Position numbers and translations under genes: made by a program
Shown here: positions 19,563-55,500 of the stretch, one piece after another
Layout: each line of letters begins with the position of its first letter
Numbering within the stretch: position 1 is the first letter of the stretch
Assembly: GCA_965235115.1 (NCBI GenBank)
Contig: OZ249452.1
Location: 12,772,001-12,836,000 of the forward strand
Direction: 5' to 3'
Length of the DNA: 64,000 nucleotides
Source of the DNA: Laetmonice hystrix
Lineage: Eukaryota
Notes under the pieces: generated by a model
The model's input: the letters and a program-made list of their open reading frames with translations, nothing else
Told to the model about the DNA's origin: nothing
Database searches by the model: none

Positions 19563-20114
19563 CTGCTTGAAGATAAACAAAAGGTCACCAGGGAGAAAGC
19601 ATGTACACCTCTTACTGCATTGACACTTCTTGCCAGCGGCCTCTTGACCCATTAAATGTCAGATGACTCCTTATAACGTGTGTGATACCTTGAAGGTAGA
19701 CTTACTCCATGCATAATAGGAATGACTATCGAAAAACTGACGTCAAATTAACGTCCTATTGTAAATACACACATTAATAAACTAATCTTTTTAGGACGTT
19801 CTACCTTTCAAAATCATGCTTGAATGTCCCCACACACTATTCTAATAGACTGTTAAGTCTTCACATGCTCTCATAGCATTTGAATTCAAACTTAAATTCT
19901 GAAGAAGCAACCTCCTCACAGTTCCATGCTTGATGCATACCAATGCCTTTGAGTTCATATATATGTATTGTGAAATCGTGTATCCAATGCATCTGTCATT
20001 GCATTGATTAGTTTTTCTCCGGCATAGATGTGATTACAACTAATTTGCATAATACTGTGTCTTCCTGAGTTATTGGAGAATATGTATATAATGGACACAT
20101 CTTAGAGCGACTAC

Positions 20115-36654: not shown

Positions 36655-36866
36655 CTGCATAGAAAAGACGAAAAGGAAATGAGGACTACATAATTATATA
36701 CATAGATATCTACTCAGTATTTGAGCTTCAAAATAGACAGAATTTTATCCTCGAATAGAGCAAATATATCCAAAGCAAGTAAAATTTAGATAGCTCAGAT
36801 GTGAAAAGGAAGTATGTCATACTTTATGAAAGAGTTGTGAGCAAACAAGAAAGAGTTCAAGAACTA

Positions 36867-37818
36867 AAGGCCCGGTCCCACTGGGGAGAGGATTAATTGC
36901 GCATGAATTGAGTATACAAATTCGGGCATTCGTTGTCGTCCGCAACAAAATTGGCCAAAAATGACAAATTTCACAGTATGAATTACGGATATATTAAAAA
37001 TGTATAGCGAATAAAAAGCGAATGCGATTGCGGATGCTCTCCCATGAGGGATACAACTGGTAAATGTTGTCGAATGTATTGCGAACATTGTGGATATGTA
37101 TACGAACAATCACGGATGTATAACGCATGTATTAAGGAAACGGATCGGACGCATTGCGATTATCACGAAAGTATTACGGATGTATTGCGCACGTGTTGCG
37201 GAAACATCGGTTGTATTGCGCATGCGCGGCATCTGCATTGCGGTCATCACTCGGGCCTTTCAGCATCATTATTCATTATTCTCCACAGCTGCACTGGAAA
37301 TGACTGGCAAATATGTCGATTTCTGCCACATTTATATAGTACTTTGGGTTTACGGGTGTTATGTATTCGCAAATTGTTCCCAAATCAGATGCAAAGCAGG
37401 CGTAATACAAATGCTTTATTCGTGGCCAATCTGTATGCATTCGCTACAAATTATTTAAGTTCCTGATGTGGACGTGATAGGCATGCTATATATTCGTTTT
37501 ACATACTGTCCCAGTCCGCTGCCAAGCCGCAATACCCCGTCAGTTGCGGATATCAGCAGATAACAGCGGATATACAGCGCATAGATTCAGTATGTATTGA
37601 GTATGTATTGCGTATGTATTGCGTAACCAAAATTTTGTGCAGCTCAAAAATCCTGGCAACGGAAAAACGTGCCTTTGTGGATAAATGCGGACATGTGAGG
37701 ATGTCGGCCGACTCATACAAGCATGTTTCACGAATATTGCGGGTGTTTAGCGAATATAAACCAATTTTATGCGGAATTCATACGCAAATCTTCCTAAACA
37801 CCAGTGGGACCGGGCCTT
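36867..37818. mobile_element. Non-autonomous TIR DNA transposon (MITE-like, ~950 bp); superfamily uncertain
   Basis: Perfect 20-bp inverted match taaaggcccggtcccactgg (36865-84) / ccagtgggaccgggccttta (37801-20). The flanks read either as a TA duplication or as CTAA/TTAA. Further imperfect subterminal matches (gcgcatgaatt / aattcatacgc) and repeated GTATTGCG motifs; no transposase ORF. Confidence 0.85.
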
Positions 37819-39240
37819 TAATTCAAGTCATCGTTTGAGTCATCAGAAAGAATTATCAAATTTAAGCCTGATATTTATTCGGTAATTTCGAGCTTTCTGT
37901 TCTTATTGAGTAATATACTGGGTGATTTTGAATAGGCGTTGCTGAAAGAGAAGGCATTTATACTGGCGATGTCATGTGATCAGCAAGTGACGACTGATAA
38001 CGTTCCATTTTGAACACACAGGCTTTCAATATTAATTTTACTCAGTTTTTGAAACTAACTTTTTATTGAATAAAACCAAACTATGTGCAGATTCTTTATC
38101 TCTATCATAATCTGATAGATTTATACTATTAGCAATTTGTACAATATACGGCCACAACGTGCCAGCTGTTGGCTGTTAGCACCCATGCAATGTTTTCCGT
38201 GACTGAGGTGAAAATATCCAGAGATGATACTTTTATTATGGATTCTATAGCGAAAAGAGAAGCTAGAATAAACAAATATTCTAGACTCAGTGTTTCTGTC
38301 AGGTCAACCACCTGATATGTCATTGTCTTCAAATATCTTATAACGCCAAAGGAACCTCAGACTATGGTATTCATGCATGGGTGCTTATGATTTCCGTGTG
38401 CTTTAAATCAACACAATTGTTTTCTGTGAGAATGTTCTGCGTTTCACAGTTTGGTTATAATATGTCCTCTCAAACCAACACGATATTGTAAATCTAAACT
38501 GAGAAAACTAGTCCTAAAATCAAACTTTCTAACATTCATACGTCACTTGTGAACATTGTGGATCACGGAAACTAGCAATCTGGATAAAACGTGGACTCAA
38601 AAGCTAAATATTCAAAAATTATCTTCTACAAAAGATTTTCAATCTACAGAAAGGCCTGCATATCGAGAAAATAAGCTGACAGCATTTCCAAAAGAAAACA
38701 TATAAAAATTATTTTGTTGCCAAAATATACACACTGTAGTAAACAGCAGGTACTCTAAATAACACATTTCAACCGTTCTACTTTTGCTCAGCTTATTTCC
38801 CAATAGACAGGAGAGCAGGAAGACATTTTCTCTTCTATATGACTTCATACGGAACTGAACAAAGCAGCTACGCAGAAAATTTATAATATATCAAAATAAA
38901 GCCCTTCAAAAAACTTCAGTTTTACTGAAGCCAACTCAAGCCCCAGATTGCTGCTTCCAATAGTTGTGCAAGAAAAATATATTGATAAATATAAATCACC
39001 AGCCTGTCAAGTACAACCTTTTTGCATAATTATGAACTTCCGTAAACAACACTTTACACCACGGAATGTTGTCCAAAAGGATAGCAAGGTTAGGTATGGA
39101 TACTTCAGTCACGATTCCTTTTTGTTTCAATGAACTTAAATTACGCCAGGAGTGTTTCTGACAAGCTGATGTTGAAACGATGCACGCGTTATTTTCATCA
39201 TTATATGCTATATAAACAATAGTCCGAGAGATAAACACAC

Positions 39241-42200
39241 CTGTGACGGTAAGAATGCCTGCCGTCTGTGCAGTACCCAAGGCATTGCTAGCCTTACAGA
39301 TGTACTCCCCCTCATCGTCTGGCAGCGTCTTCCTGATGACCAACGTGTGAGTTCCGTCAGGCCTTGACTTGAACTCGTACAGGGTGAGGTCGGTGACCTC
39401 CTCTCCGTCACAGTACCAGGTGACCTTCGGGGCGGGTTCACCAAAGATGCAGCACTCCAGCCGGACACTTTGGCCCCCGGAAACGGTCTTATCTAAGAGG
39501 GTCCTTAATACGGTGGGCTTCATAGTGGGTTTGGCTGGGCGGGATTCAGTTAAATCAACCCTCATTTCAAGATCAGTTTGGGAGATAGTGTGGGTCTCCT
39601 TGGTAACCTCAACGGACCCCCCTTGGACTTCTTGCAGGATTTCCTTCTTGACCTCCTCTCTGACCTCCAACTGCTCTTCCCTAGATGTTTCATCCCTTTC
39701 AACATCTACACTAATATCTCCATTGACCAGCTTTTCAACCTGCACAACTTCTTCCTTTAATTCCTTTGAAACGTCAACACTAGTTTTTTCTTTGCCCTCA
39801 AGCTCTTCATTCATGCTCTTTTCAACCTGCAACGTTCTTTCAATTTCAACTGAAACCTCCTGTGTAACTTCCTTCTGCATTCTCTTGGTCATTTCCTGAG
39901 CCTCAACCGACAAGTCAACTTCAGTTTCCCTAGTTTCCCTCTGAGATACAGCTCTATCAACTGAAATCTCCTCCTTGACAACTCTTTCAATTCTTTGAGA
40001 CATTTCCCCAGATATTTCTTCTTCTAAAATTTTCTCAGACTGAATATTTCTTTGAGCATCAAAAGCAACCTCCTCCATGACCTTCCTCTCAAACATCGTG
40101 TCTTGTTTCCTAGCATCAACAGACATTTCAGCAATGTTCTCTCTTTCAGCAACCACAGTTTCCTCAATCACCTCTCTTTCCTCCTCTGTTGAGCGTTTTC
40201 TATTTAAGACTTTCCCCTCTATACCAACAGTAACTTCTTGGATCAACATTCTTTGCGTTCGCTTCCCTATTTCTTGGGCTTCTTGAGAAGATTCAACTAC
40301 AACCTCTCTTTCAATCTCAAGTGTCCTTTCAATCTCTCTTTTAGGTATAGCTCTCCTTTCAATGTCTACTGAAACCTCTTGATTGATTTGTTTTTGAGTT
40401 CTTCTCGCAATATCTGAAACTTCCTTGGTATCGATCTCATCCCTGGTCTCCTCCATAAGTTGCTCTGACTGAACACCTTTCTCAATCTCAACCACGACCT
40501 CCTCTGTTACCTGCTTCTTAACCTCACCCTTATCAACTTTGTCAATCATTTTCTCCTCAACTATCATCCTCTCTTGAATCTCCATGAAAGGAGTCTGCAA
40601 TTTCATTTCCGGGAAAGCCGCCTGAATTACCGTTTCCTCGAATAAATGAGAAGCTGGAAGCTCTTCAGTGAATGTTTCAGCCACAGGCTTAAACTCATAC
40701 TCCTCACTTTCAGCCCTTGGTGCCTGAGCAAACACTTCTTTGGGAGCCTCTACAGTCACCTCCTCATGGATCTCCTGGGAAATCTTTTCTACAACCTCTC
40801 TGTCAATAACCTTCTCCTGGAACGTCCTAGCTACATCAATCACTTGGGATTGAGTCTCTTCCATGAAGGAGAATGTATCTGTGACTTGTTCTAGTACTAA
40901 TTCAGTGGAATCCTGTCTTGGAACTGCTGAGTGAGCTGGCTTTCTTATCTCTTCAACCACCTCCTCCCGCACTACTTTAGAAACCTCTGGGCCCTTTATC
41001 TCTTCTCTGACCATTTTTTCCTCCTTCATGTATTCTGAGATCTCCTCAGATACTTGTTTCGTTACCTGCATGGCCTCCTCGTTCTTGCTTTCATAGACCT
41101 GCTGTCCTTGAGTTTCTACCTGCCCCACTCTAGTTTCTGTTTCATTTGACTCAGCATAAGCAAAGGCAGCTTCAGTTTTTCTTGCATGGGCCTCAGCATA
41201 CCTCTCATGTGCCTGTTTAAAGGCAGCCTGAGCATACTGACGTTGACTCTCCTCCTTCGACACCTTTATGTATTGAGTGTATTCAGTTACCTCCATAAAG
41301 TGTTCCATCAGCTCATCAAATTGGAACACTTCAGTATAGCCTCCCCCGGCTTTCTTAAGGTCTGAATCAATTACAGTAATCTGAACTTCTTCAATACTGG
41401 TATCGGGTAGAGATTCAATGTCTTCAGCTATCTCATGGGGTATGTCTGGCTGAGCAAGTGTCTCAACTGCCATAACTTTAGCCGTCTTAATCTGAGCCTG
41501 TTTCTCTACGATCTGGTCTTCAGCTAGTTCTATCTCAGTATCAGAGACATTCAGTGCCTCCTCTTCATCAATTACTTCTGCAATTTGTACAGTTTCTTTG
41601 GGAACCACTGGAGCGACAGCAACTTTCTGTAGAGACTTTTCCTCTACTAGGTGCTCCATGGTTTCTTCCAACAGAACCTCATGTACATCTTCAATGTCTT
41701 CAGGTGAAACGTGCTCCTCAGCAACACCTATCTGTTCGGGCACTCGGTCTATGACCATTGCTTTATCTTCAAGTTTTATGTCAATAACTTCTACAGGGGC
41801 TTCTTCAGTAAGAACTTCACTAACCTCCTGTATAAAGTCCTCTTTGACCTCTTCATGCACCTCGGGAGTCTGTTCTGGCATTCTCTCATTAATAAGAGGA
41901 CACTGACAATCTAGCTGGCTAAGGATCAACTCTACAGGGGCTTCCTCAGAAACAGTCTCATCAACCTCAAACACTATATCTTCTGGAACCTCCTCTTTTG
42001 TTTCAATCGTCAACTCTGGGATCCTTTCTGCCACTAAAACCTCACCATCCATTGGGTTATCTGTCATCTTTTCTGGGACCTCCTCTTGTGGTATCTCTGA
42101 AACATCCTCTGTGTCTTCCACAGGATTAACCTCAGCTGCCTGGGGTGTTAATTCTGGAACTCTATCACTGACCTCAGCCAGAACTTCTGGTTCTTTCTCA

Positions 42201-44115
42201 ACTACCTCCTCACCTGGGGTGCCCTCTGGTACTGTTTCCTTAATAACTACTGCCTCTTCTTTGATTACACTCTCTGTCATCTGAGAAACCTCCTCCGGAA
42301 CTGGTTCTGTGCGAGACTCTTTGTCAAAGATCTCGACAGGGATCTGTTCAGGGGCATGTTCTGGTTGCTTTGCAACAGATTCCCCAGGCAACTGTTCCGA
42401 GGGAGTTTCATCAGTATCAAGAACCACTCCGCTTGGGATCTCATCCATAAACTCAAAGGTCTCTTGTGGAATCCTGTCAGAGACTTCCACAAATTTATCT
42501 TCTTTCGGCTTGAGGACTTCCTCCACCACCTCTGAAACCTCTACCTCAGGAACATTATTTGGGGCATCCACTGGGACCTCCTCCGAAATCTCAATAGTTT
42601 GTGTTAAGATCCTCTCCGAAACTGTCCCCTTATATTTCTTTTCCTCCTCAACATCCTCTTTCTTGGGTGATTCCTCCTCAACTGTTTCAGAAAGACCTAC
42701 GGCCTTTTCCACCCCAACAGGCTCAACTACCTCAGAAACATTTTTGGGGACTTCCTCTGATAGTGTCTCCTTTTCTAGGATCTCAACGGGAGTCTGGACA
42801 GGAATGAGGTCTGGGCTCTTATTTATCGATTCCCCTGGGAGTTCCTCCTCTGGAGCTGATTCAACTTCTTCAATTTTATCAACAATTACTTCCTCAGTAA
42901 CTTCTGCTGTTTGCTCTACTGATCTATCAGCAACCTCTACCACTTTAGGAGCGACACTTGGAATCTCAACTACCTCAGTTTGTTCTGTAGAAACCTCAAG
43001 AGCTGATTCAACTTTATCAACAGTTACTTCCTCAGTAACTTCTGCTGTTTGCTCTACTGATCTATCAGCAACCTCTACCACTTTAGGAGCGACACTTGGA
43101 ATCTCAACTACCTCAGTTTGTTCTGTAGAAACCTCAACAACATCCTCAGCAGATTCTTCTAGAACAGCCTCAATGACTCCCTCAAAAGCTCTTTTAGTTT
43201 TGACTAACTCTAGAATTTCTTCTACGGTTTTCTCTTGAATGACTGTTTCTGAATACTCAACTACTACTTCTGATGAGATTTCCTCTTGCTTTTCAACCAC
43301 ATGCTTCAAGTCAACCTGCTGAGCTTCAACTTCTTCTGGGCGCTCTTCCGATAGAGTCTCAGAGACCCCTAGAACCTTTCCTTTCAGAATCTGCTCTATA
43401 ACCTCTGATGTCATTTCTGGGGTAAGCCCGGTGAAATCTTCTTTTTCTAAGAGATCAACTGGGGTTTTTTCTACAGTACGCATTGACATTTCATCAGTGA
43501 CCTGTTCCTGGCCCTCTTCTGATCCTAGCACAGGAACTTGGTCCAAAGGCTCATCATCTAATGGTTTATCTACTTTTTCAGAGACAAGAGTCTCAGTGTA
43601 AACCCTGCATGCTAGATCACGATAAGGTTCATCAATAAGCTCCTCAGAGATCGTTTCTGAGAATGTTTCGGGAGCTTCTTCAAAGACATCTTCATCCTCC
43701 TGCTCAACCTCTTCATCAACACGATGTGGTGCTGGAACCGGTGCTTCGACCATTGGAGCTGGCTCGGGTAGGATGAACTCTGAAATAGGCTCAGGTTCAG
43801 GTAAAATTAATTCTTCGTCTACTGGCGCAGGGACCTGGTACCACTCGGGCACATCTGGAATAGGACGCTCGGCGACAGGTTGTGGCTCCGGGATAATTGG
43901 CTCCTCATCAACTGGAACTGGAAGGTCGACTTCATCATAAAGCGATGAATCGGAGGTGTAGTCATCTGTTGTTAGATCTGTTTCCTCACCTTTAGTCTCC
44001 GTTTTTGCAACCTGCATTGTTGTTTCAGTTCGACTCATGGCAACCTCGGATTTCTCCACCTCGACTGTTGTCTTCGTGGTATAGGTCGTTTCTTCCATCG
44101 TTTCTGTGACCTCCT
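39241..44115 (-). CDS. Exon (4875 nt, phase 1-1): E/V/P-rich segment with degenerate ~46-aa repeats, ending in an Ig domain (~39242-39516)
   Basis: Acceptor acttgagcag|AG at 44116-17; donor G|GTGTGT at 39235-40; matches the 1700-aa ORF; VRLECCIFGEPAPKVTWY...DDEGEYICKASN. Confidence 0.9.
42875..43137 (-). repeat. Near-perfect 138-bp (46-aa) tandem duplication within the 4875-nt exon
   Basis: cttctgctgtttgctc at 42901 and 43039; EVSTEQTEVVEIPSVAPKVVEVADRSVEQTAEVTEEV occurs twice. Confidence 0.93.
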
Positions 44116-45458
44116 CTGCTCAAGTAAAAAAGTTTACTTAAAAGCATAGTGTCAGAAGCAGCATAAATAGGGAACACATTTGGTATCTATTAACATATAT
44201 GTATGTTGTAGAAAAGAAACACTGAAAAAAATAGTGAAATGTATAATTTCTGGTCTACAAGAGGACGAAATTGTCAGAAAATGAAATTGCGCGTACACAA
44301 ACATTGCGCCTTTTGGGGGATGAAACTTCACAACAGTTTTTCTATATTTTGTGTTCATTTGTTTTGGTTTTAGTTGCAGCTATAAAATAACGACTGTCCT
44401 TTGATGGGGGTCGATATAAATGTGTGTTTTGCATTGTTTTATGTATGTTGGAACCCATTTCACATTCACTCACACATTCAGAGCAATCACTCTTCTTTGA
44501 CGTTTTAGCTGGACCGAGTGGCAGCTAGGGATACTGAGCAGGATTAGATCAACCCTTTTAAGTAATGCAGCAACATACAAATCTTCAAGACAGAAAATTT
44601 GAAAAAGTCCATAACAAGTTTCTACCATATTTACATCTTTCTAGTGATACAATCGTGTACAAAATATAAACAAAGGGACATATAAATAGATAAATAAAAC
44701 CAAGGCTTTTCTTCACACGTTTGGCAGTCGTTTGTCAATAAGCTGCATGCTCCAACTAGGTTGAGATCACTGATCCAGACTCACGTTTCGTTCAGGTTCA
44801 TTATAAACTGATTGACATGTTTGAAGGTTCGTCTTCTCTCATAATATTTACATTTTTCAAAACCTGATCACATGCAGTAATTGGACTTGGCGGTGTAGAT
44901 TAAGATCCGGTGTTGGGTGCACGATTTGATGAGAATGGGAGATTCTGTCTTGCAGGGAGTCTGATGTATATGATGGTGTGTGATGGACATAACAACATCA
45001 ACTCTTCCACTACATTCACACAAGGTTACTTCCCACATCCTTTTGCTTCTGCATCCTTCATTCAGATAACAATGACATTTAACCACTTGTTCTTCTGAGG
45101 TGAAGAAAAATTCAAGCCCATGATTTTCTTGTTGCTTTTTCACCTTTTACATAAAATCCGTAGAAACATTTTGGTGCCTATGCCGACTGACATGTTCATA
45201 CTACATTTTGCTGGCCACAGACCAACCTCTAAAACATGCAAGGGGTCCTCAACTCTTTGCATACTTTTGATTGTACAACATAACACGTTGTAAGAAGCAG
45301 GTACAAAATTACAAAGTGTAATATACAAAACCATTCAAGTTGATTTTGTATATCATTTGTAACACTACACTCCAGGAATGAGAAACAAGTAAGGAAAAAA
45401 CAAAAAATCTGTGTTTTTTGTTTTGTTTCTTTGTGCTGATCAACGGTTGTAAACTTAC

Positions 45459-45519
45459 CCAGCAGTTACGCATCCAGTGTCAGTAAAAACTCGCAGGTTC
45501 ATGAAGAAGTCAAATCCTC
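45459..45519 (-). CDS. Possible 61-nt exon (phase 1-2; GFDFFMNLRVFTDTGCVTA)
   Basis: Acceptor gtgtag at 45520-21 and donor GG|GTAAGT at 45453-58. Only the phase-1 frame is open; the other two contain TGA. Confidence 0.3.
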
Positions 45520-45796
45520 CTACACGCATGCAGGTTTGAAGGCAAAAATCACCTTTCTAAAAAATGACAAACATGAACAACGGGGTACAACTAGAACAAG
45601 GAACATGCTTTCTGGCTTTTATTGTATTTACTAACTCGAAGATGGTTCACAGAATATTCATTTCATTTGTAATATCCCTGTAACATCTTCCGTGCATTTC
45701 ATGCTAAAGATCTCTAGTTCTCTCAACACATTCACAATGACACAATCGGTCCCAAGTAAAACTGATGCAATACTTCACGCCAAACAACCGCTACAA

Positions 45797-45942
45797 TTAT
45801 TTCCATGTTTTCATAACTAGAGAGACATGACTTCGATTGTTTCTGTGAAAAGCTGTAATAGAATGACATTTTGTTTTCAGCGACATGACAAGACCCCGAG
45901 ATACAGTATCACCGCGCTTGGAAAACAGTCCTTGTGGAACTG
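45797..45942 (-). CDS. Candidate alternative terminal exon: VPQGLFSKRGDTVSRGLVMSLKTKCHSITAFHRNNRSHVSLVMKTWK*
   Basis: Very strong acceptor (tttcttttttttaattttctatcctgcag|CAG, a NAGNAG) at 45943-44; open in phase 1 to TAA 45797-99; AATAAA on the minus strand at 45618-23. Confidence 0.35.
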
Positions 45943-47221
45943 CTGCAGGATAGAAAATTAAAAAAAAGAAATATATAAAAAAAAGTATCACAGAAATGAT
46001 GCTCTCAGGTTTCTGGATTATTTCATGACCAGTTTGTCCGGTATAAGGCGTACTTTGGGACCAAGTGTGCAGAAGTGAAGTGTGGATATACAGACAATAA
46101 GGTATTAATATTCAACTCCTGAATATTCAACACCATTCAGTCAAGTCAACACATTATCTACATATTAATGATGCAGATAACCTCATTGGTGTTACTCACA
46201 AAAGTGCATTTAGCAATGGTAGCCATACTGCAGGTATAGCTAGTGCATACTCAATCCATACTAGGCAAAATATACTTTAAACAAAAGTACACTGTTAAGT
46301 GTCCCTCTGCATTTACACCGTGACAATAGAAACAATAAATGGTACAGTACGGAACTAAATAATAAGCGTTGGTACATTTTGCTTAATGTTTATATAAAGA
46401 AAATCATGTTTTGGGACAAAGTAATATTTCAAAGAACTTAGATAAATACAAAATGCAAAGGTATGAGAACACATTTCTCTCTAGCTACATAATGCCTAGT
46501 GTGGATGTGGGTTTCGTTAGCGCCACCTTCAGGGAAACCATTGAACCATGCACATGATAACCAGCTGACATTTTGGCAGGTTTGGGGGAGCAGGATGCAC
46601 CGTCCTCAAAATAAAGCATTTCAACCCAATGCACAATATTACCAGCTTGTGGAATAGAAATATATAATAAATTCGGATAGATGGGAGTGAATAATAGAAG
46701 AGCAAATAATATACCGCTATACTATACCCTTGTTTTTCTGTCGTTTTCTAAGGCAGCCTGGCATTGCGTCAAGCCGTCGAACATATGCACCAAAATGAAC
46801 CTGTCTTACATGTAAAACTCTATGATTGGAAACAGCTATAATAACCCATCCTTTCAAAACGGGCATTATAGACTCCAGGTTCAGATAGGTTAATGGAAGA
46901 AGTGGTTATTTGTCATTAAAATCACTCTTTCCTGATGTACACTCTTTCTGAGTTACAACTAAGATTCAGGACTTTTATAGAGTTCAATCCACTTTTTATT
47001 TCAGGTAAAGCTCTCCGTACAAAACCTGAAGTCACACATCCAGACGTCCCCCAACCTTATGCTTAACTTTTGGACTAGTTTACACCATGGACGGATGTTT
47101 TATCAAAATGTATTGACACTTGTTAAGACGTGCTCCGCTCCATACCTCATACCTGCCAAACTGTACAATCTGGATTGTATTTTGCCACACAACTGAAAGT
47201 CTTCCCAAAACTGCCACTTAC

Positions 47222-47259
47222 AGCTACAACAAAGCAGTTTAAATGCACGACGAGGTTAT
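47222..47259 (-). CDS. Possible 38-nt micro-exon (phase 1-0; NLVVHLNCFVVA)
   Basis: Perfect donor GTAAGT (plus strand 47216-21) and possible acceptor ccacaag at 47260-61; open in phase 1. No partner phase-0 exon was confidently identified. Confidence 0.2.
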
Positions 47260-48033
47260 CTTGTGGTAACACGAGGTTTACACACAACAGTTTGAAACAT
47301 TTTTATTTGATGGCTTTGTACTGAAGGATCGGGGTCACATTACAAGGTTGGAAACATGACCGATTTTATCATTTACATAATTGGTTTAAAAAATATTTTG
47401 TAATCATTGTGGTTTCGTTAGTAGCAGTGAGCAGTTTTGAGCGGCCTTCTTACATTAGTGAGCAAGGAAACTTTACAACTGTATTCTAAGGCTTTTGTTA
47501 GAAGATTGCACACGACCACTAATGGTAATGATCACCATAGCATTCTCTTCATACGTCTCAAGGCACATAGCTGTGTCTATGGATAAACTGGTGACAACAA
47601 AATCTGGCTTGTTTGTAATTTCCAAGTCATGGAGATGACAGTTGCTGCATAGTGACCTGCAGCTTGAATGACACTGAAAGACTTTTACACCACTGCCATT
47701 CACATCGTAGCTTTCACACTCTAAAGTGTTTCACTCTTGTGACACAAGTGGCTATATATATCCCATTCATCACAAAAGAAATACAACCGTCTATGGGATT
47801 CTTCATGTTATAATGTATGTAGATGACGTTATGATCTTCAGATAACTCTACAAAATAACAGCGTATGAGTGTCAATAATAGGGAGTCCCGGCCACTGTGA
47901 AAAGACCCAAAGGAACTGCAAGCTTAGCGCTAGCGCCATCTACAAAACACAAAAACGCAGGCAAGCTCGTAAAACTGCAGCGTGTCGATGTGCCAGACTC
48001 AACGCTTTAACGCCAAGAGCTGAAATTTCCTCT

Positions 48034-48047
48034 GCGCCCTCTAGCTG
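48034..48047 (-). promoter_or_regulatory. CTCF-like motif (CAGCTAGAGGGCGC on the minus strand)
   Basis: Matches the CCASYAGRKGGCRS consensus at 12/14 positions; related cores at 46520-33, 47933-46 and 51197-207. Motif match only. Confidence 0.3.
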
Positions 48048-48509
48048 TCCAAGGGGTTCCACTGGGTCTGGGTGTGTGACTTCATAAACTGAGGCTTGGC
48101 ATTCGGGTTCACTTCCCACAACAGCCACTTTATCAGATTCTAAAAATCAAATAAACCGCCGCCACAATGTCAACAGCACATTTTTTTTTTTTTTTACAAT
48201 GGGAACAATAGCCTTGTCTCTCTAGAATGCGCTCATTGGGGTTTAAGGCCAAACTTGGCGGTAAACACTAGAGGGTCATCTAAGTATTCACCGACAGTTT
48301 CCCTGGATTTATAAAACCGGATTTCTTGAAATGGGCACAAGGACTGGGACACCACCTCAGTGGGTCGTTCCAGTTTTACCAAATTGTCCATATTCTAAAT
48401 CATGAGCACACTTTTTTCAATGAATACTTGAACACTAACCTTACTGCTATGGTTAGTAAACTTACTGCTTCTAAGCAACATGCATCATGGTTGCCTTCAG
48501 GACAAATTT

Positions 48510-49984
48510 GAGTTTGATGAGTGCTGTTGATGGTGGGAACCTGATCCAAGTTCACAATTCTTATTTGTCTGTACATAATGACTGTATTGCGCAAAGCATC
48601 ATGGGACCCATGAAGTCAATTTCCCTACTCAGACTACATAGATTAACAAATACATAATTTTACAAACAAAAGGTGTTCAGAACACAATGTGACTAATAAT
48701 CAACACAAACCAATACAGCTTCCAGTGCAGGTGCAGGGTCAACAAGACAACAGAAATGGGGAAACCAATTTCAGATGCCAAAAATAGCATCAGATAGACT
48801 TCAAAAGAAAGAAAACAGAACGAGTTGAAAAGTAATTAATACAGTTCCCACCTCCATTTCTTCTCTCCCTCTGTGTCCCATGATGCTTTGCTACAGGAAG
48901 TGACCTACTCCTCTAAATTGATTCATTTTTTTCTTCACAGATCAAGGCAGCCATTTTGAGACAACAATACGCAGCACAGTGTACTTGTCACAAGGGAGGA
49001 CCAATCAGATGATTTGTATCTGATAGATCCAAAACCAATCAAGATCTTTGTTTCAGATTGGTGAAACAGAAATGGTCATACAGCCCTGGTCTAGGTAATG
49101 CAGTGAAACTTTGAGATTTTTTTTGGTGCAAGTTAATATGGTTCAAAACTGTTTCCATTCTTCATCAATGATTTTTTCAGAGCTCAGAAAACAAACAAAC
49201 ATATCAAAAAGCTAAACTACCTTGGATCCTCCGCCCTTTTAACACAACATATGAAGAACTGGAGACCTAATGCCACCACAATAACCTCCTTTTTCATGAT
49301 TTGAGATATCAAAGTACACAGACTGGTAACATGAGACACCATCTTTTCTTCTTTTTTTTTGTTTTTTTTCTATAAACTTCAGTCTGGGGCCATCTTTGAG
49401 AAATGCTTCTCCGTTTGCGAGGCGTCATGTTACCAGTGGCACCTAGACCAGGGCAGAAAAGCTACTTGAGGACCATCTAGAAAGTCATCCCTCCAAAAAG
49501 TATCGAAGGGACTGGGTGACGGGGAAGCACCCAGCGAATCAGGACGCACAATTATTGCAAGGAAAACAATTTCTTGGGACAAAGTACACATGAGCAAGAA
49601 ACTTCACACTGCTGACGAAACATGACGGCACGAAATAATTAAACAATCAATGAGATCAGGCGGAATACATCTGATAACAAGCCGGTGACCAATAACCACC
49701 AAGCTGCCAAGAATTTTCAGCAATAACAAAAAAAGGGGACATAAATGCATAAAGGACAAATTCACCAGATAATAATTTAGTACAAAATGGCTGCCACATA
49801 ATCTGCACCCTGATTGGCTACGACTACTGCTACGCTGGATAAATGTGCAATTCTAGACTTGAGCTCAGCAAATGGAGGATGGCAGTTGAGCTTGTTTGGA
49901 AGACGGTCGCCACTTGACGAATATCTCAATCTCAACATCATAGAATTCCTCTAGAATCACTTGCTCAACAGCACTCATCAGCTC
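48510..49984 (-). other. Nested inverted repeats predicting a branched pre-mRNA secondary structure
   Basis: Exact reverse-complement pairs: 48515-30/49965-80 (16 bp), 48591-607/48875-91 (17), 48946-58/49783-95 (13), 49083-96/49441-54 (14) and 49322-34/49425-37 (13). Also imperfect 48979-94/49573-89. All are non-crossing. Confidence 0.7.
49865..49983 (-). CDS. Candidate alternative terminal exon: (K)LMSAVEQVILEEFYDVEIEIFVKWRPSSKQAQLPSSIC*
   Basis: Acceptor ttttctgtgttcag|AG at 49984-85 with a pyrimidine-rich tract upstream. Open in phase 1, which matches the upstream donor at 51310. E/V-rich, ends at TGA 49865-67, and no strong internal donor was seen. Confidence 0.5.
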
Positions 49985-51310
49985 TGAACACAGAAAATAA
50001 TCATAGAGTCAGTTCTAAAGAGTGTGGAGACAAGAGAGAAAAGCAGAATGACAAAGAATGACGACGATTCTGTTTTAACCAATAAGAACAACAAAATTAC
50101 TTCAGTGCTGAATAAGCAGTGTTGTTGTCATGGTGATGCAAGATATATGCCAATCACAGTGCAGCGAATCATGTGCTGCAGAACAAGAAGTCCAAGATTT
50201 TCCTCCAATCATCTGATCTTATAGAGGGTCAGTGCATGGAGCCCCAGAGCTGAATTCTGATGACATTTTCCATTACACCAGAAAACAGGTCTGATAAACT
50301 TCCAGCTTCAAGATTTAGGGTAGGAACGTACTTAGTATTCTTGCTCTGCAGAGAATGCATGTATAAAAAAATTGAGGTGACTGGCAGCATGATATTACAT
50401 ATTACAGGTCCCATATTCAGTGAGCACCATGTATATAAGAGGTAGGACAAGAGGTTAACAATACAATGCCTCACAGATACATAGCACCATGGTTTACGTT
50501 TTCTTGTCTAGCCTACTTTAACATATGAAAAAAATGGCCTGAGTATACACATTTACATATGCACATTTAATATTATTCTCTTTGGTCAGTCTACTTTATT
50601 TCAATAATATCACACTCTGAAAAAACATCTGATTAAATCCAGAATATCATTGTATAAATTTAGACCAATATTCAGGAACTCCAGAAGCTATCTAAATTGA
50701 CTTGGTGAAGGGGAAATGAGGATGATACTAAACAAAGCAATAACAAAATACAATGACCAAGAGGGCAAGGGGTGTTTTGGGTGCTGGCAGTGTCTGAGAA
50801 CTAGATCACACATAAACTAGGTCACGCAAGAACTACGTCACACCGCTGACCTTTCTGGAGCAATTTGTCCGATTTGATGATACCACCTCACACAAATAGT
50901 TTCATTCGACACAACTACATAACAACGCGCCAAAACCATCACACTGAAATTATCGGTCTCCTAAAAGCAATCTCCGCCAAAACCATTTTTTTTTGTTAAC
51001 AAATGAAAATAAACAAAACCAGAACTTTCCTTTTAGCCATTTCCCAGCAAAGGGGAAGAATACGAAGAGAACTGAATATTGACTGATAAAGAAAACAGAA
51101 AACACAAATTTGGTTGTCTGATTGATCATCAGTTATGTTGTCCACAGCTATCTGCGCTCATACATTGTGTACAAACTACAGTCCAAACACAAAAGAGCCA
51201 CCTAGTGAGTAACAAGAGTATCAGGGGTACTCTTATCTAGAAACATCGACTAGCGAAGCACTTCTGGTATACATGCTCTACTCTCGACAATACGGGCAAC
51301 AGTCGCTTAC

Positions 51311-51476
51311 TTTCAACAAGTAGCTCAGCCATAGTGGTTGCGACACCAGCTTCGTTCTTGGCCTCGCACATATATTCAGCTTCATCTTCGATGGAAACCT
51401 TGTCGATGCGAAGGATACAACGGCCTTGTTTGTATTCCAGGACTGTGTGTTCTGTGCTACTGATCTTCTTGCCGTC
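51311..51476 (-). CDS. Exon (166 nt, phase 0-1): second half of the Ig domain (DGKKISSTEH...EDEAEYMCEAKNEAGVATTMAELLVE); not in ORF track
   Basis: Acceptor ccctgtag|GAC at 51477-78; donor A|GTAAGC at 51305-10; completes the Ig domain begun in the previous exon. Confidence 0.9.
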
Positions 51477-51787
51477 CTACAGGGGGCAGCACAGCAGTCA
51501 AACACAATTTAATAAATGATCTTCATTGTAATATTAATATAATTTTACTGGGACAAATTTAAAAAGTGAATTCTACTTTTAATTCTGATTGCCTTCAAAT
51601 TAGTATTACAAAACTGACATTCATAGCTTTTCATAGTAAAAATTAACGTTTACCAGAAGTAGGGAAACAGTAGTTTCTCTACTGTAGCACCTCTCAAAAA
51701 TCCTCTCAAAAATTTTTCCTTAACCCCTACTCCCCAATTATCGTGTGAATGTTACCATGGAGATAACCACCTTACACAGTAACTCAC

Positions 51788-51921
51788 CTGGTACCACGTG
51801 ATTTCTGGAGTAGGATGTCCCGTAACACGGCATTCAAGCGTGACAGGCATCGTCTCAAAGATTTCCTTGTGCTCCAGATTCCTGGTGAAACGAGGTGCTT
51901 CTGGTTGCTCAGGCATTTGCA
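51788..51921 (-). CDS. Exon (134 nt, phase 1-0): first half of an Ig domain (APRFTRNLEHKEIFETMPVTLECRVTGHPTPEITWYQ); not in ORF track
   Basis: Acceptor tttcctag|TG at 51922-23; donor CAG|GTGAGT at 51782-87; I-set motifs read by hand translation. Confidence 0.9.
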
Positions 51922-52121
51922 CTAGGAAAGAAAAAATAATACTGGTTTTTATTTGCTGTTATAGTAGATGGAGGGTTATTTACAGGTGAAACTTAACCTA
52001 GCTTAATAAGCTTCATTTTAAATTACTGCATCGTTTGTACCTATTTCTATGGCACAGTTATAATAAAGGAATTTCAACATTTTAAATATACATGTAGGCC
52101 CGTCGAGAAATCAGTACTTAC

Positions 52122-52549: not shown

Positions 52550-55500
52550 GGAGTACAGACAGGTAAGCAGTGGTGATGCATGTTCCAGCATCATTGACAG
52601 CTTTCACGGAGTACTCTCCCTCGTTTCCAGGCATGACGTCTAGGATACTCATCCTACAGACGCCTTCCTCGTACGTGATCTCCACGTCCTTGGTGGCCTT
52701 GATCATGCGACCCTCCACGTACCACGTCACGGTCGGCATTGGGACGCCGTTGATGCGGCACTCGAAGACGGCCTTTTCGCCTTCAAAGATGGTGATGTCT
52801 GAGAGTGGGAGCTCAAACACCGGAGCCATCAACTGCCTGGCGGATACCTCCGTCACTTGCGTAACTTCCTGGACGGTTTCCGAGACTTCAGGTTTCTTGA
52901 TCACCTCAATCTGTTCGGAGGTGAATTCAGTGATGACCTGTTTTTCCTCGGTCACCTCCTGCGCAGTGCGGACTATCTGCTCGGTCTTGATGGCTTCTAG
53001 CAGTTCAATTTCCTTTCTGGATAGTTTGGGTGAGACCTTTTCAATCGAAATGTCAATATGTTGTTCTGCAGCCGCTTCCACAGTCATAATTACCTTTTGA
53101 GTTTGAGTTTGGAACTCCTTGGTATCCTTCTTAGCTTTCCTAAGGCTCTCGGTCTCTTCTGTGGAGGCAACCTCTGCTTCCTCTAAAAAATGATGCTCCT
53201 GGTCAGTTGTAGTTTCTTCATCTGTTATTGTTGGCCGCACATGTGATTCTAAACGGTAGCGTTCAATGACTGCGCCCTCGTAGGATGGACGGACAACAGA
53301 TGGAATCATCCAAACCTCTTTAATGTGAGCGACATATTCCTGGGCAATGTCCTCCGGTGGATGTGATTCAGCAACAGGCTCAACACGGGTTTCGGGTTTG
53401 TCTCCCTCCTCTGGAGCCTGCAGCAGTACAATAACATCCTCCTGGGCTGGAATCTCCTCGGAGTATCCAGACACGTCTTCTTTGGTCATGCAAACATCAA
53501 CGAGCTCTTCATACGTCTCAACATGGGATGGTTTCGGGGACCCTCTATCAGCGACCTCTAGTGCGACCTCGACTGCACTCTGGGTGGTCGTTTCCTGGGT
53601 AACTGTGTCCGCGGGTAACTCCTCTGTGACCTGGGGCGTGGTCAACTTCTCTTGAAGAGCCACCATAGAAGGACGTCGTTCCTTCTTCTTGGCTGTTTCC
53701 AGGGGGACTACCACTGCCTCTGGTTTAGTCTCGGTGACTTCAAATTCAATGTGGGCCTCCTCAGTTATCTCGATATGCTGCACTTCCTCCTGTGTTGGCA
53801 CAAGTGTCTGTGCCTTATCCTGGACTGCAGGGGTTGAGAGGTCTACTCTGACCTCTTCCCCTGGAATTTCAGGTTCAGGAGCCTCAAAGAACATGTCTTC
53901 TTCTTCCTCCTCTGAATGTCGCTCTTCTGTAAGGTCTACATGTGCTTCCCTTGTGTCCTGTACCATGGGTTGGTCGTACATGCTCACTATCTCTTCTTTC
54001 TGTGGTGCCATGCTCTCTAGGGCGGCAAGATCGCTCTCAATTTCGCCCTCGGATAGAACCTCATCTTGAGGAAGAGCATGACTGACACGTGCACCCTCCA
54101 CCTGTGGTTTGGACAGGTCGACCGTGATCTGTTGCTCCATTGACACCTCTGGTGATGGCATTCTCTCGAGTAAATCATAGATTGTCTCCTCTGGCAGTCT
54201 TTCTTCCTGCGTCTGAACAAGACTCTCGCGGGCAGCCTCCACCACTTTCTGACCCATTTCAACCTGGACCTCTTGCCCATCAGTTGTTTCCGTGGTGATG
54301 TCCTCCACGAGTTCATGGGCCACGTCTTCAGCGAAAGCCTCGATCTGAGTCAGGACATGTGATTCTGTGACTGGTTCAACAGATGATTGACCTAGATCTA
54401 CAGTTACTTCTGTTGGGTGTGTTTCAATATCAGGGACCGGAGATATACGATCAGTGCCTTCCTCAGTGATTTCCTCTTGGACAGTTTCTACGCGAGTTTC
54501 CGTTGCCTCCTCTTTGAGGGGCTGGCTAAGCTCTACGAAGGTCTCCTGTTGTTGGGTGGCCTCAGTCGTTGTCTCCTTGACAGCTTCAGTGATCTGTTCC
54601 ACTCCAATCTTCTCTTCCATTGCTTCCACACGCATTGGGAGCCCAGCAGGTTCTGGAGCCTGGACCATGTGCACCACTATGTCCTCTTGCTGTGAGACTT
54701 CAGTGGGAACAGCAGCAACCTCCTCTGTGATCTCAGATGACACCTGTTCGGCAACTACTCCAACCCTTGACACCAGTTTCTCCTCTGCAGTTGTTTTAAC
54801 GAGGTGTACGATTATCTGTTCTTCTTGTGGGACCTCGGTGGGTACCTCAGCTACCTCTTCAGTAATTTCTGGAGTGACTTGCTCATCAACAGCTTGAACA
54901 TGGGTTTCCCTCTTCTGTTCTGCCATTGGCTGTGCAAGGGTTATGAAGATCTGTTCCTCCTGTGGGACTTCAGTGGGCATTTCAGCAACCTCTTCCGTGA
55001 TCTCTTCTACTACGGTTTCATCCACAGCTTCAACACGCGATTCCTTCTTCTGTTCAGCAGTGGGTTTAACAAGAGTCACAAATATTTGCTGCTCTTGTGG
55101 GAGCTCACTTGGGACCTCAGCAACCTCTTCAGTCACCTCTGTTGTTATCTGCTCTGCAACGGTTTCCACTCGGGACACCATTTTCTCTTCAGCAGTTGTT
55201 TTAGCCAAGTGGACAACAATCTCTTGTTCTTGTGGGACTTCAGTGGGAACCTCAGCCACTTCCTCTACGAGTTCAGGACTCAAGCGCTCAGCAACAGCTT
55301 CAACACGTGTCTCTGTCTTTTGTTCAGCAGTTGGTTTTACCAGTTGCACAAAGATTTGTTGTTCTTGAGGAAGTTCAGTCGGAATTTCTGCGACCTCCTG
55401 GGTGACCTCTTCGGTGACTTTTTCAGCAACAACTTCAACCCGTGATTCCATGGTAGGCTGGGCAGTTGGTTGTTTCAACTCCACAACAATTTCTTGTTGT

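What the first reader, a model, noticed from the sequence alone, without database searches (positions are those of the whole stretch)
48510..49984. A ~1.5-kb nested inverted-repeat scaffold in an intron: a predicted multibranch pre-mRNA structure
Seen in sequence: five perfect helices and one imperfect helix, all mutually nested with no crossing. A = tgatgagtgctgttga 48515-30 / 49965-80. B = gcaaagcatcatgggac 48591-607 / 48875-91. C = ggcagccattttg 48946-58 / 49783-95. F = gtgtacttgtcacaag 48979-94 / cttgggacaaagtacac 49573-89 (1 bulge, 1 mismatch). D = gccctggtctaggt 49083-96 / 49441-54. E = actggtaacatga 49322-34 / 49425-37, whose 3' arm lies 3 nt from D's. A encloses B and C; C encloses F, then D, then E. 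Rough arithmetic: ~1e6 position pairs in 1.5 kb times 4^-13 gives ~0.02 expected 13-mers under uniform composition, so five at 13-17 bp is far from chance. The sequence between arms shows no obvious similarity. Established: long-range intronic pairings regulate exon choice in Dscam1, 14-3-3xi and Mhc. Inference: this is a splicing or 3'-end switch in a titin-like gene; I did not recognise it as a described element.
Basis: partly seen in the sequence, partly recalled or inferred. Interest (0 to 1): 0.85.

Follow-up and report, generated by a model that had tools for sequence, protein, structure and literature searches.

The report
Conserved RNA helices around an alternative gene end
The five perfect inverted repeats are real, and they lie in a conserved alternative last exon and its long 3' UTR within a titin-like muscle gene, next to RNA helices kept across distant species that probably help decide between a short and a giant protein form.

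Summary
All five perfect helices (A-E) are at the stated coordinates and are far beyond chance: 5 observed against about 0.02-0.1 expected. The imperfect helix F is at chance level.

The region is not a plain intron. On the minus strand it starts 3 nt inside a conserved, stop-containing alternative terminal exon (CDS 49983-49865). It continues through that exon's ~2.9 kb 3' UTR to an AATAAA at 47000. Contigs from two related species that lack the intron join the preceding Ig exon directly to this exon.

- **Helix B** has both arms conserved in two other species, while its loop is not alignable.
It ends 29-41 nt before the poly(A) signal.
- **Helix H** (47160-51/46581-72) encloses the poly(A) signal and crosses G in all three species where it can be checked.
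- **A, D, E and C's downstream arm** have no counterpart in the other species. The only close relative has no retrievable DNA.

No evidence supports a transposon, an inverted-duplication relic or an Rfam family.

Best reading: a long-range RNA duplex system governing use of an alternative 3' end. This is a new member of a known kind. The mechanism is inferred, not shown.

The parts
51311..51476 (-). Second half of a split I-set Ig domain (exon). It ends with one spare base (phase 1), and the donor GTAAGC follows at 51310.
   Evidence: Translation. It is 69-75% identical at DNA level to the same exon in L006, L008, L009, L010 and L011.
49984..50012 (-). 3' splice site of the alternative exon: branch-like CTGAC, a pyrimidine tract, and CAG at 49986-49984.
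   Evidence: Read. An AG|AG acceptor is present at the same place in L006, L009, L011 and L013.
49865..49983 (-). Alternative terminal coding exon, phase 1. It encodes (K)LMSAVEQVILEEFYDVEIEIFVKWRPSSKQAQLPSSIC and then the stop TGA at 49867-49865.
   Evidence: Homologous peptides are found in P0037, L004/L011, L005-L010, L012, L013 and L014. It is joined directly to the Ig exon in L010 and L012. No GT donor is conserved inside it.
49965..49980 (-). Helix A, upstream (5') arm. It is 16 nt, lies inside the coding exon and starts 3 nt after the splice site.
   Evidence: dG -26.6.
48515..48530 (-). Helix A, downstream (3') arm, 1434 nt away. It closes the domain that holds C, D, E and B.
   Evidence: No equivalent pairing exists in L005, L010, L011 or L013.
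49783..49795 (-). Helix C, 5' arm (GGCAGCCATTTTG), 70 nt after the stop codon. This is a conserved box.
   Evidence: The box is present after the stop codon in L011/L004 (one mismatch) and in L005/L007 (10 nt).
48946..48958 (-). Helix C, 3' arm (13 nt, dG -21.5).
   Evidence: In L011/L004 the exact same 13-mer lies upstream of the alternative exon instead.
49441..49454 (-). Helix D, 5' arm (14 nt, dG -28.5).
   Evidence: Not found in other species.
49083..49096 (-). Helix D, 3' arm.
49425..49437 (-). Helix E, 5' arm (13 nt, dG -18.9), 3 nt from D's 5' arm.
49322..49334 (-). Helix E, 3' arm (90-nt loop).
48872..48891 (-). Helix B, 5' arm (17 bp perfect, 20 nt at 95%, dG -32.2).
   Evidence: A 20-nt block is identical in L005/L007. 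The arm is present in L013 with one mismatch and is degenerate in L014.
48591..48610 (-). Helix B, 3' arm (loop about 267 nt).
   Evidence: 15 nt identical in L005 and 18 nt identical in L013. The loop is not alignable.
48979..48994 (-).
48066..48084 (-). Helix G, 5' arm.
47027..47045 (-). Helix G, 3' arm, ending 26 nt before the AATAAA.
   Evidence: The core is conserved in L005, L010, L011, L013 and L015, with compensatory changes and sense-strand G.U pairs in the extensions.
47151..47160 (-). Helix H, 5' arm core (TTTGGCAGGT). It matches the conserved box GTTGGCAGGT with one extra T.
46995..47000 (-). AATAAA poly(A) signal of the alternative terminal exon. A UGUA lies between G's 3' arm and this signal.
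   Evidence: An AATAAA lies 29-41 nt after the G 3' core in all five genomic loci. The intron-less L010 contig ends 22 nt after its G arm.
46572..46581 (-). Helix H, 3' arm core (ACCTGCCAAA), 414 nt downstream of the AATAAA. About 17 of 20 positions pair.
   Evidence: The same arrangement, with the poly(A) signal inside H and H crossing G, is seen in L011 (14 bp perfect) and L015 (11 bp perfect).
38996..44115 (-). Next exon of the long isoform: acceptor CAG at 44118-44116, phase 1, about 1700 codons of E/V/T-rich repeats, then an Ig domain.

Best explanation
The nest is the upstream part of a system of long-range RNA duplexes built around an alternative 3' end of a titin-like gene.

**Layout on the minus strand.** After the split Ig exon, the transcript has two options. 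It can splice to a short conserved terminal exon (49983-49865) and be polyadenylated about 2.9 kb later (AATAAA at 47000). That gives a truncated protein. Or it can remove the whole 7.2 kb as an intron and continue into the next giant exon (44115).

**The helices.**
- A closes a 1.43 kb domain that contains C > D > E and hairpin B.
- G closes the next 1.0 kb and ends just before the poly(A) signal.
- H pairs a box upstream of G's 3' arm with a box about 400 nt beyond the poly(A) signal. H can therefore form only on read-through pre-mRNA, and it then encloses the signal.

**Proposed mechanism (inferred).** A and G shorten the effective distance between the 3' splice site or stop codon and the poly(A) signal from about 3 kb to a few hundred nt. 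This would favour definition of the terminal exon and so the short isoform. If cleavage does not occur in time, H forms, crossing G, and loops out the poly(A) signal. This would favour read-through and splicing to the long isoform.

**Shown:** the helices, the exon, its use in intron-less contigs of related species, and the conservation and covariation of B, G and H.

**Inferred:** the direction of each effect, and that A, C, D and E are selected rather than merely present.
For: - Helices A-E are real and far beyond chance. Together with G they do not cross.
- The alternative exon is conserved at 75-81% DNA identity, like the neighbouring Ig exons, while flanking sequence is unalignable.
- Its reading phase fits both splice choices.
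- Contigs L010 and L012 join Ig exon 2 directly to it, and the L010 UTR runs on to G's 3' arm.
- Between the window and L005, L013 or L015, the only shared blocks of >=13 nt in about 2.9 kb of UTR are the arms of B and G: 20, 18, 16, 15, 14 and 14 nt. Shuffles give a longest block of about 12 nt on average.
- B's ~267-nt loop is not alignable although both arms are identical.
- G is present in six species. Its 10-11 bp core is invariant. Its extensions differ by double substitutions: CCAGAC/GTCTGG against CCAAAG/CTTTGG, and T-A against G-C at the position that is a C.A mismatch in the window. Some G.U pairs are possible only on the sense strand. In L015 the helix extends outward instead of inward, to 16 bp.
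- An AATAAA lies 29-41 nt after G's core in 5 of 5 genomic loci.
- The H 5' box is present in all six species. Its complement lies downstream of the poly(A) signal in all three loci that extend far enough (10, 14 and 11 bp perfect), always crossing G.
- In L011/L004 a C-box pair brackets the alternative exon, with one arm in the upstream intron, so it can form only in pre-mRNA.
- Two of the four window-specific helices use an ancient functional element as one arm: the exon start for A and the C box for C.
Against: - There is no transcript, structure-probing or mutational data for this species, so use of the exon here is inferred from relatives.
- A, D, E and C's 3' arm have no counterpart in L005, L010, L011, L013 or L015. 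Their selection is untested.
- The one close relative (P0037, ENA ERZ26222911) could not be read.
- B is absent or degenerate in L010, L011 and L014.
- B and H show conservation of both arms but little covariation, so conservation of the sequence itself is not excluded for them.
- All arms except H's 3' arm lie in the mature short mRNA, so a purely post-transcriptional role fits equally well.
- Whole-region folding energy is unremarkable.
- The effect of helix A on the adjacent splice site could be inhibitory rather than helpful.
Confidence: 0.5

Rival explanations
1. The helices act in the mature short-isoform mRNA rather than in pre-mRNA processing. Bulge-free long-range duplexes would compact a long 3' UTR and serve as binding sites for a double-stranded-RNA-binding protein of the Staufen type. 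Alternatively they would bring the poly(A) tail near the stop codon. Either way they would set mRNA stability, translation or localisation.
For: - Both arms of A, B, C, D, E and G lie between the splice site and the poly(A) signal, so they are kept in the mRNA.
- The intron-less L010 contig carries both G arms.
- The helices are perfect and symmetric, 12-19 bp long, with loops of 90-1434 nt.
- Human STAU1-bound long-range 3' UTR duplexes are described as symmetric and lacking bulges. They have a mean span of about 250 nt, reaching kilobases, and they compact the UTR and are linked to lower degradation (PMC10164587).
Against: - H's 3' arm lies beyond the cleavage site in three species, so H cannot exist in the mRNA.
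- In L011 one C arm is in the upstream intron.
- Helix A abuts the 3' splice site, and G's 3' arm keeps a fixed short distance to the AATAAA. Both point to processing signals.
- No protein-binding data exist.
Confidence: 0.25
2. Only B, and G and H outside the reader's span, are functional. A, C's downstream arm, D and E are young neutral by-products of DNA-level events, such as short template-switch or inverted micro-duplications during replication. These would create perfect, sharp-edged inverted copies of nearby sequence.
For: - The four helices are absent from all other species available.
- They are perfect Watson-Crick with abrupt ends, and their flanks show no extension that is G.U-tolerant or strand-specific.
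- There is no covariation to examine.
Against: - Four independent events of 13-16 nt in 1.5 kb are unexpected when the other 5.9 kb of the same intron has only G (conserved) and one 12-mer.
- They do not cross each other or the conserved B and G. For six random chords the chance of that is 132/10395 = 0.013 (my arithmetic).
- Two of the four take a conserved functional element as one arm.
- The ancient helices B and G are just as perfect, so perfection does not imply youth here.
Confidence: 0.2
3. The nest is a relic of nested terminal-inverted-repeat or foldback transposons, or of one decayed inverted duplication.
For: A, C, D and E are concentric with roughly similar centres. A real transposon-like element with 24-nt terminal inverted repeats sits in the next intron at 36861-37824.
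Against: - No target-site duplications flank any arm pair, and the arms share no terminal motif.
- The arms and the interior are single-copy in the window.
- Inverted 8-12-mers are not in excess, so no decayed palindrome surrounds the arms.
- One arm of A is conserved coding sequence. B's arms are conserved at the orthologous place in species whose flanking sequence has diverged completely.
Confidence: 0.03
4. Helix C is not an RNA helix. It is two oppositely oriented DNA binding sites for a YY1/Pho-type factor. The box CAAAATGGCTGCC resembles the YY1 consensus; this rests on my own knowledge and was not tested.
For: The box is conserved after the stop codon in three lineages. Its complementary copy changes position: downstream in the window, upstream of the exon in L011, and none in L005.
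Against: The two window copies match over all 13 nt, beyond the expected motif core. L011 also keeps a complementary pair. This reading explains only one of the five helices.
Confidence: 0.05

Closest known systems
Pairs of conserved complementary regions (PCCRs): long-range RNA structures, RNA bridges and exon loop-outs in animal pre-mRNAs (Kalmykova et al. 2021, PMC8052449)
   Same: - The arms are nearly perfect complementary boxes of >=10 nt with dG <= -15 kcal/mol, hundreds to thousands of nt apart in one gene. Here dG runs from -18.9 to -32.2.
- Nested groups occur in that catalogue too.
- Both arms are conserved while the loop is free to vary.
- That paper describes looped-out alternative 3'-end exons. 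It also proposes that RNA structure suppresses intronic polyadenylation.
   Different: - This case is in an unidentified non-human animal and in a titin-like gene.
- Most arms lie in an alternative terminal exon and its UTR rather than in constitutive intron.
- Seven helices are concentrated around one alternative 3' end.
- One conserved pair of helices (G and H) crosses, and H has an arm beyond the cleavage site.
- No functional data exist.
   Same: Long-range intronic base pairing that affects exon choice.
   Different: There is no cluster of mutually exclusive exons. There is no single docking site complementary to several selectors, since each arm has one partner. The choice here is between terminal-exon polyadenylation and read-through.
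Staufen-bound long-range 3' UTR duplexes (hiCLIP atlas, PMC10164587)
   Same: Symmetric, bulge-free duplexes with spans of about 100 nt to kilobases that compact a long 3' UTR.
   Different: Binding is unknown here. Helix H and the L011 C pair need sequence that is absent from the mRNA.
Short isoforms of giant titin-like genes made by an internal alternative end (Kettin is a short isoform of Drosophila sls, PMC11081514; vertebrate Novex-3 titin, from my own knowledge)
   Same: A giant Ig-rich muscle gene has an internal alternative termination that yields a much shorter protein.
   Different: No homology of the terminal peptide to those isoforms was tested or found, and Pfam finds nothing in it. 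I know of no report of RNA helices controlling those choices, and I ran no search aimed at that question.

Membership tests
Conserved long-range RNA pairings (PCCR-type) | Complementary boxes of >=10 nt with hybridisation energy <= -15 kcal/mol, within 10 kb in one gene | tested here: met
   A -26.6, B -32.2, C -21.5, D -28.5, E -18.9, G -29.1 kcal/mol. H has a 10 bp perfect core with about 17 of 20 positions paired.
Conserved long-range RNA pairings (PCCR-type) | Both arms evolutionarily conserved | tested here: inconclusive
   - Met for B (window, L005/L007, L013), for G (six species) and for H (three species with both arms).
- C: the 5' box is conserved, but its partner changes position.
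- A's 3' arm, D and E: no counterpart in any available species. The close relative could not be read.
Conserved long-range RNA pairings (PCCR-type) | Compensatory substitutions that keep the pairing | tested here: inconclusive
   - Met for the extensions of G: double changes at four positions among 4-6 species, plus sense-strand G.U pairs.
- Not seen in B or H, whose arms are invariant or carry single mismatches.
- No data for A, C, D or E.
- Too few sequences for a formal covariation statistic.
Conserved long-range RNA pairings (PCCR-type) | Disrupting or restoring the pairing changes splicing or polyadenylation | not testable with these tools
   Needs minigenes or genome editing.
Terminal-inverted-repeat / MITE / foldback transposon | Target-site duplication flanking the inverted repeats | tested here: not met
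   No direct repeat flanks any of the five arm pairs (sequence; flanks).
Terminal-inverted-repeat / MITE / foldback transposon | Multiple copies in the genome | tested here: inconclusive
   Single-copy within the 64 kb window. In related loci the arms occur only at the orthologous site. The rest of the genome was not available.
Decayed inverted duplication | Residual inverted similarity around and between the arms | tested here: not met
   Inverted 8-10-mers are at shuffle level, with none of 11-12 nt. Arm flanks pair at random level.
Docking-site/selector system (Dscam1 type) | One docking site complementary to several selector sequences upstream of mutually exclusive exons | tested here: not met
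   Each arm has exactly one partner within 2 mismatches in the window. There is no array of alternative exons in the interval.
Staufen-type 3' UTR duplex | Both arms within the 3' UTR of the mature mRNA; long bulge-free stem | tested here: met
   Arms of A-E, B and G lie between the stop codon or exon start and the AATAAA. The G arms are present in the intron-less L010 contig. This is not met for H.
Staufen-type 3' UTR duplex | Bound by Staufen or another dsRNA-binding protein | not testable with these tools
   Needs CLIP or hiCLIP.
Any described RNA family (Rfam 15) | Match to a covariance model | tested here: not met
   No match up to E = 1 in 44000-52000 on either strand.

The most novel reading that the evidence does not exclude
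The conserved, crossing helices G and H form a kinetic switch at an alternative poly(A) site. G presents the signal. H can form only after polymerase has read about 230-410 nt past the signal, and it then hides it. This would time the choice between a short and a giant titin-like protein.

Lineages then add their own perfect helices (here A, C, D, E) to retune the switch. Helix A pairs coding sequence with a distant complement, so it could also act as an ADAR editing duplex recoding the short isoform's tail.
Probability: 0.15. Interest if true: 0.8.

Novelty: new member of a known kind. Interest (0 to 1): 0.62.

Why it matters
How animals choose between short and giant isoforms of titin-like muscle proteins is poorly understood. 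Well-documented cases of RNA structure controlling an internal poly(A) site are few.

Here the only non-coding sequences kept across distant species in a ~3 kb terminal exon are the arms of long-range helices. One of those helices has an arm beyond the cleavage site.

This gives a compact, directly testable model for structure-controlled alternative 3'-end formation: seven defined helices, one splice site and one poly(A) signal. It also lets the evolution of such helices be followed, with an ancient core and lineage-specific additions.

It also shows that a cluster of perfect repeats found by eye in one genome was a real pointer to a conserved system.

Tried and rejected
- **Folding energy.** Whole-region z-scores against dinucleotide shuffles do not separate this region from a control intron or from the orthologous region in another species. 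An earlier attempt timed out.
- **Rfam.** A permissive-threshold scan of 44000-52000 found nothing.
- **Decayed palindrome.** Rejected by the bimodal length distribution.
- **Transposon.** There are no target-site duplications, no shared termini and no other copy in the window.
- **Helix F and the alternative pairing 49415-31/49619-35.** Both are at chance level.
- **Finding the source genome.** Exact look-ups of five window ORFs all returned 'not on record'. A literature search for the assembly and sample accessions found nothing. Cluster names were empty. The species therefore remains unidentified.
- **First homology search.** The 1700-aa exon gave only Ig-level hits.
- **Close relative.** P0037 and P0017 (ENA ERZ26222911) returned gene tables but no DNA.
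- **An A-like pairing of the exon start in other species.** None stands above shuffles. A duplexfold version timed out.
- **duplexfold on long flanks of the poly(A) site.** The output was uninformative, but reading it exposed the window's H arms.
- **RBFOX-type UGCAUG and QKI-type ACUAAC motifs.** They are not conserved next to the helices.
- **Formal pair counting.** I did not build an alignment for the count of structure pairs. The arms sit about 1 kb apart in unalignable sequence, and the structure string would have had to be typed at length. Pair tables were computed by script instead.
Full report
**1. The observation**

- A: 48515-30 / 49965-80, 16 bp
- B: 48591-607 / 48875-91, 17 bp
- C: 48946-58 / 49783-95, 13 bp
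- D: 49083-96 / 49441-54, 14 bp
- E: 49322-34 / 49425-37, 13 bp

In 48400-50100 the inverted 8-, 9- and 10-mers occur at the frequency of first-order Markov shuffles. There are none of 11-12 nt. The five of 13-17 nt compare with an expected 0.025. A gapped scan gives 5 hits against 0.11 expected.

Across the whole 7.4 kb between the flanking exons, the only other perfect inverted repeats of >=12 nt are helix G and one 12-mer.

The imperfect helix F is not special. Matches of its score occur 3.4 times per shuffle.

The arms are single-copy in the window and the interiors match nothing else in it. Each helix ends abruptly, and the flanks pair at random level on either strand.

**2. What the region is**

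The gene is on the minus strand. It consists of I-set Ig domains separated by very long exons of E/V/T-rich tandem repeats, so 'titin-like' is fair.

The Ig domain upstream of the finding is split into two exons, the second being 51476-51311. That exon ends in phase 1 with a GTAAGC donor. The next giant exon starts at 44115 after a CAG acceptor, also in phase 1.

Between them, the orthologous locus of another species (L003/L004) showed an ORF homologous to the window's minus-strand frame at 50008-49868. At DNA level this stretch (49986-49910) is 75-81% identical to six other loci. That is the same level as the Ig exons, and nothing around it aligns.

It has a good 3' splice site: CTGAC, a pyrimidine tract, and CAG at 49986-84. 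It starts in phase 1 at 49983 and encodes (K)LMSAVEQVILEEFYDVEIEIFVKWRPSSKQAQLPSSIC. It stops at 49867-65.

The conserved part contains no GT donor shared among species. In every species the frame runs into a stop soon after.

In two contigs from related species (L010, L012), Ig exon 2 is joined directly to this exon with no intron. I infer from this that they are spliced transcripts. In L010 the two halves of the Ig domain are also joined. Its untranslated tail runs 1.65 kb to a sequence matching window 47042-47028.

The first AATAAA downstream of the stop in the window is at 47307. The next is at 47000, and comparison singles that one out (section 3).

It is intronic only for the long isoform. 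Arm A's upstream copy is codons L-M-S-A-V-E, starting 3 nt into the exon.

**3. Comparative evidence**

I obtained the locus from five other species:
- L004/L011
- L005-L007, which are one species with 99.7% overlaps
- L010
- L013
- L014/L015

The terminal peptide is 43-75% identical to the window's, so the UTRs are unalignable overall.

A much closer relative exists (P0037, 33 of 37 residues identical, ENA ERZ26222911). Its DNA could not be fetched.

*Helix B.* A 20-nt block containing the 5' arm and a 15-nt block containing the 3' arm are identical in L005. The loop is 267 nt against 271 nt but cannot be aligned. L013 has the same 17-bp helix with one mismatch and a 411-nt loop, plus an outer 11-bp helix. 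In L014 it is degenerate, and in L010 and L011 it is absent.

Its core AGTCACAC/GTGTGACT is present on both arms in all six species. The extensions differ in ways that keep the pairing:
- window CCAGAC/GTCTGG against L010 CCAAAG/CTTTGG, which is two double substitutions
- at the window's C.A mismatch position, L005 has T-A and L013 has G-C
- L005 continues with three G.U pairs that exist only on the sense strand
- L015 extends outward instead, to 16 bp perfect

This is the clearest sign of selection on an RNA duplex.

In all five genomic loci an AATAAA follows the G 3' core by 29-41 nt. The intron-less L010 contig stops 22 nt after it.

*Helix H (also outside the span).* A box GTTGGCAGGT lies 70-165 nt upstream of G's 3' arm in all six species. 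In the window it reads GTTTGGCAGGT, at 47161-47151. Its complement lies downstream of the poly(A) signal in every locus that extends that far:
- window 46581-72: 10 bp perfect, about 17 of 20 positions paired, 414 nt past the AATAAA
- L011: 14 bp perfect, with the AATAAA at 8550 between the arms
- L015: 11 bp perfect

By simple arithmetic, a given 10-mer occurs by chance in 600 nt with probability about 6e-4, and less for the longer ones.

H therefore encloses G's 3' arm and the poly(A) signal. It crosses G in all three species, in the order G5', H5', G3', AATAAA, H3'.

*The C box.* GGCAGCCATT(T/A)TG follows the stop codon in the window (70 nt after), in L011/L004 (about 120 nt after) and, as AGCCATTTTG, in L005 (about 155 nt after). 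Its exact complement lies downstream in the window (helix C). In L011/L004 the complement lies upstream of the alternative exon, about 65 nt into the preceding intron. There the pair brackets the exon and can form only in pre-mRNA.

*A's 3' arm, D and E.* These have no counterpart anywhere else. L013's exon copy of arm A is 15 of 16 identical, because it is coding, yet L013 has no downstream complement. These helices are therefore specific to the window's lineage, and their selection is untested.

**4. What it is not**

- It is not a transposon nest. There are no target-site duplications, no common termini and no extra copies. One arm of A is an old coding exon, and B's arms are conserved at the orthologous site.
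- It is not a decayed inverted duplication.
- It is not a described RNA family.
- Thermodynamic z-scores are uninformative at this length. The sense strand gives -3.1, the antisense -2.2, a control intron -2.4 and L004 -2.6.

**5. How it most likely works (inferred)**

With A and G closed, the path from the 3' splice site or stop codon to the poly(A) signal shrinks from about 2.9 kb to a few hundred nt. The inner helices C, D, E and B fold first and bring A's arms together. This would help define a very long terminal exon and so favour the short isoform.

H needs sequence transcribed about 230-410 nt after the poly(A) signal. If cleavage has not happened by then, H can form and enclose the signal. 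The whole unit can then be spliced out as the intron of the long isoform.

The conserved crossing of G and H fits either two alternative conformations or a pseudoknot. I cannot tell which.

The direction of A's effect is open, since it could bridge or could mask exon positions +4 to +19. A role in the mature mRNA (Staufen-type binding, UTR compaction, protection from decay) explains A-E and G equally well. It does not explain H or L011's exon-bracketing C pair.

**6. Relation to known systems**

The closest known kind is the conserved long-range complementary pairs catalogued in human genes. These are >=10 nt with dG <= -15 kcal/mol. The catalogue includes nested groups, RNA bridges and loop-outs of alternative 3'-end exons. 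Its authors also propose that structure suppresses intronic polyadenylation (PMC8052449).

Long-range, bulge-free STAU1-bound duplexes that compact 3' UTRs are the closest mRNA-level analogue (PMC10164587).

Short isoforms of giant titin-like genes made by an internal end are known. Kettin, for example, is a short isoform of sls (PMC11081514).

There is no exon array, and each arm has a single partner.

I rate the finding a new member of a known kind.

**7. Limits**

- The species is unidentified.
- There are no expression data.
- That L010 and L012 are transcripts is inferred from the missing introns.
- The covariation rests on 4-6 sequences tabulated by script, not on a formal test.
- Whether the arms are multi-copy in the rest of the genome could not be checked.

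Noticed in passing
window 36861-37824: A ~960-bp element in the neighbouring intron has 24-nt terminal inverted repeats (96% complementary, core TAAAGGCCCGGTCCCACTGG). It also carries many internal copies of an 11-nt motif (GTATTGCG-type). It looks like a non-autonomous DNA transposon and is quite unlike the A-E helices.
   Followed up: partly
window 1460-34234 and 55433-56808: There are very large in-frame tandem-repeat arrays inside the coding exons. The main ones are 138 bp x 70 copies (8362-18072), 138 bp x 22 (2507-5579), 345 bp x 20 (20851-27936), 405 bp x 10 (30167-34234) and 135 bp x 10 (55433-56808). They encode PEVK-like E/V/T/P-rich modules.
   Followed up: no
window 50009-49999 with 46827-46817 (minus-strand sense): A perfect 11-bp complement links the branch-point region of the alternative exon's 3' splice site to a site 173 nt past the poly(A) signal. 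If real, it would loop out the whole terminal exon. Statistically it is at chance level, with ten 11-mers observed against 6.5 expected.
   Followed up: partly
window 37938-37951 with 40140-40153: A 14-bp perfect inverted repeat links the intron to the coding sequence of the next giant exon. It is borderline by chance, with about 0.7 expected per window by arithmetic.
   Followed up: no
window 48484-48479 (sense UGCAUG): An RBFOX-type UGCAUG lies 31 nt downstream of helix A's 3' arm. Helix A would place it next to the alternative 3' splice site. It is not conserved in L005 or L010.
   Followed up: partly
window 48482-48490, 48596-48604 and 48878-48886: The 9-mer GCATCATGG from helix B occurs a third time just downstream of A's 3' arm. 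That offers a 9-bp alternative partner for one B arm.
   Followed up: no
window 62581-62596: A perfect 16-nt palindrome, GTTCAACCGGTTGAAC, lies in this span.
   Followed up: no
ENA ERZ26222911 (no DNA held): contigs of 145,116 and 82,946 bp: The same sample holds a near-identical terminal peptide (P0037) on one contig. It holds a 49%-identical copy of the upstream Ig region (P0017) on another. The gene may therefore be duplicated in this lineage, and some 'orthologues' used here could be paralogues.
   Followed up: no
L013 (ENA ERZ25070786 ctg140979l) 11111-16163: The long repeat exon is broken into many short overlapping ORFs in this contig. That looks like frameshift errors from a long-read assembly, so the single mismatch in its B helix may be an error too.
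   Followed up: no
L013 19256-19266 with 19747-19757: In this species helix B is wrapped by an extra perfect 11-bp outer helix. This is another lineage-specific addition to a conserved helix.
   Followed up: no
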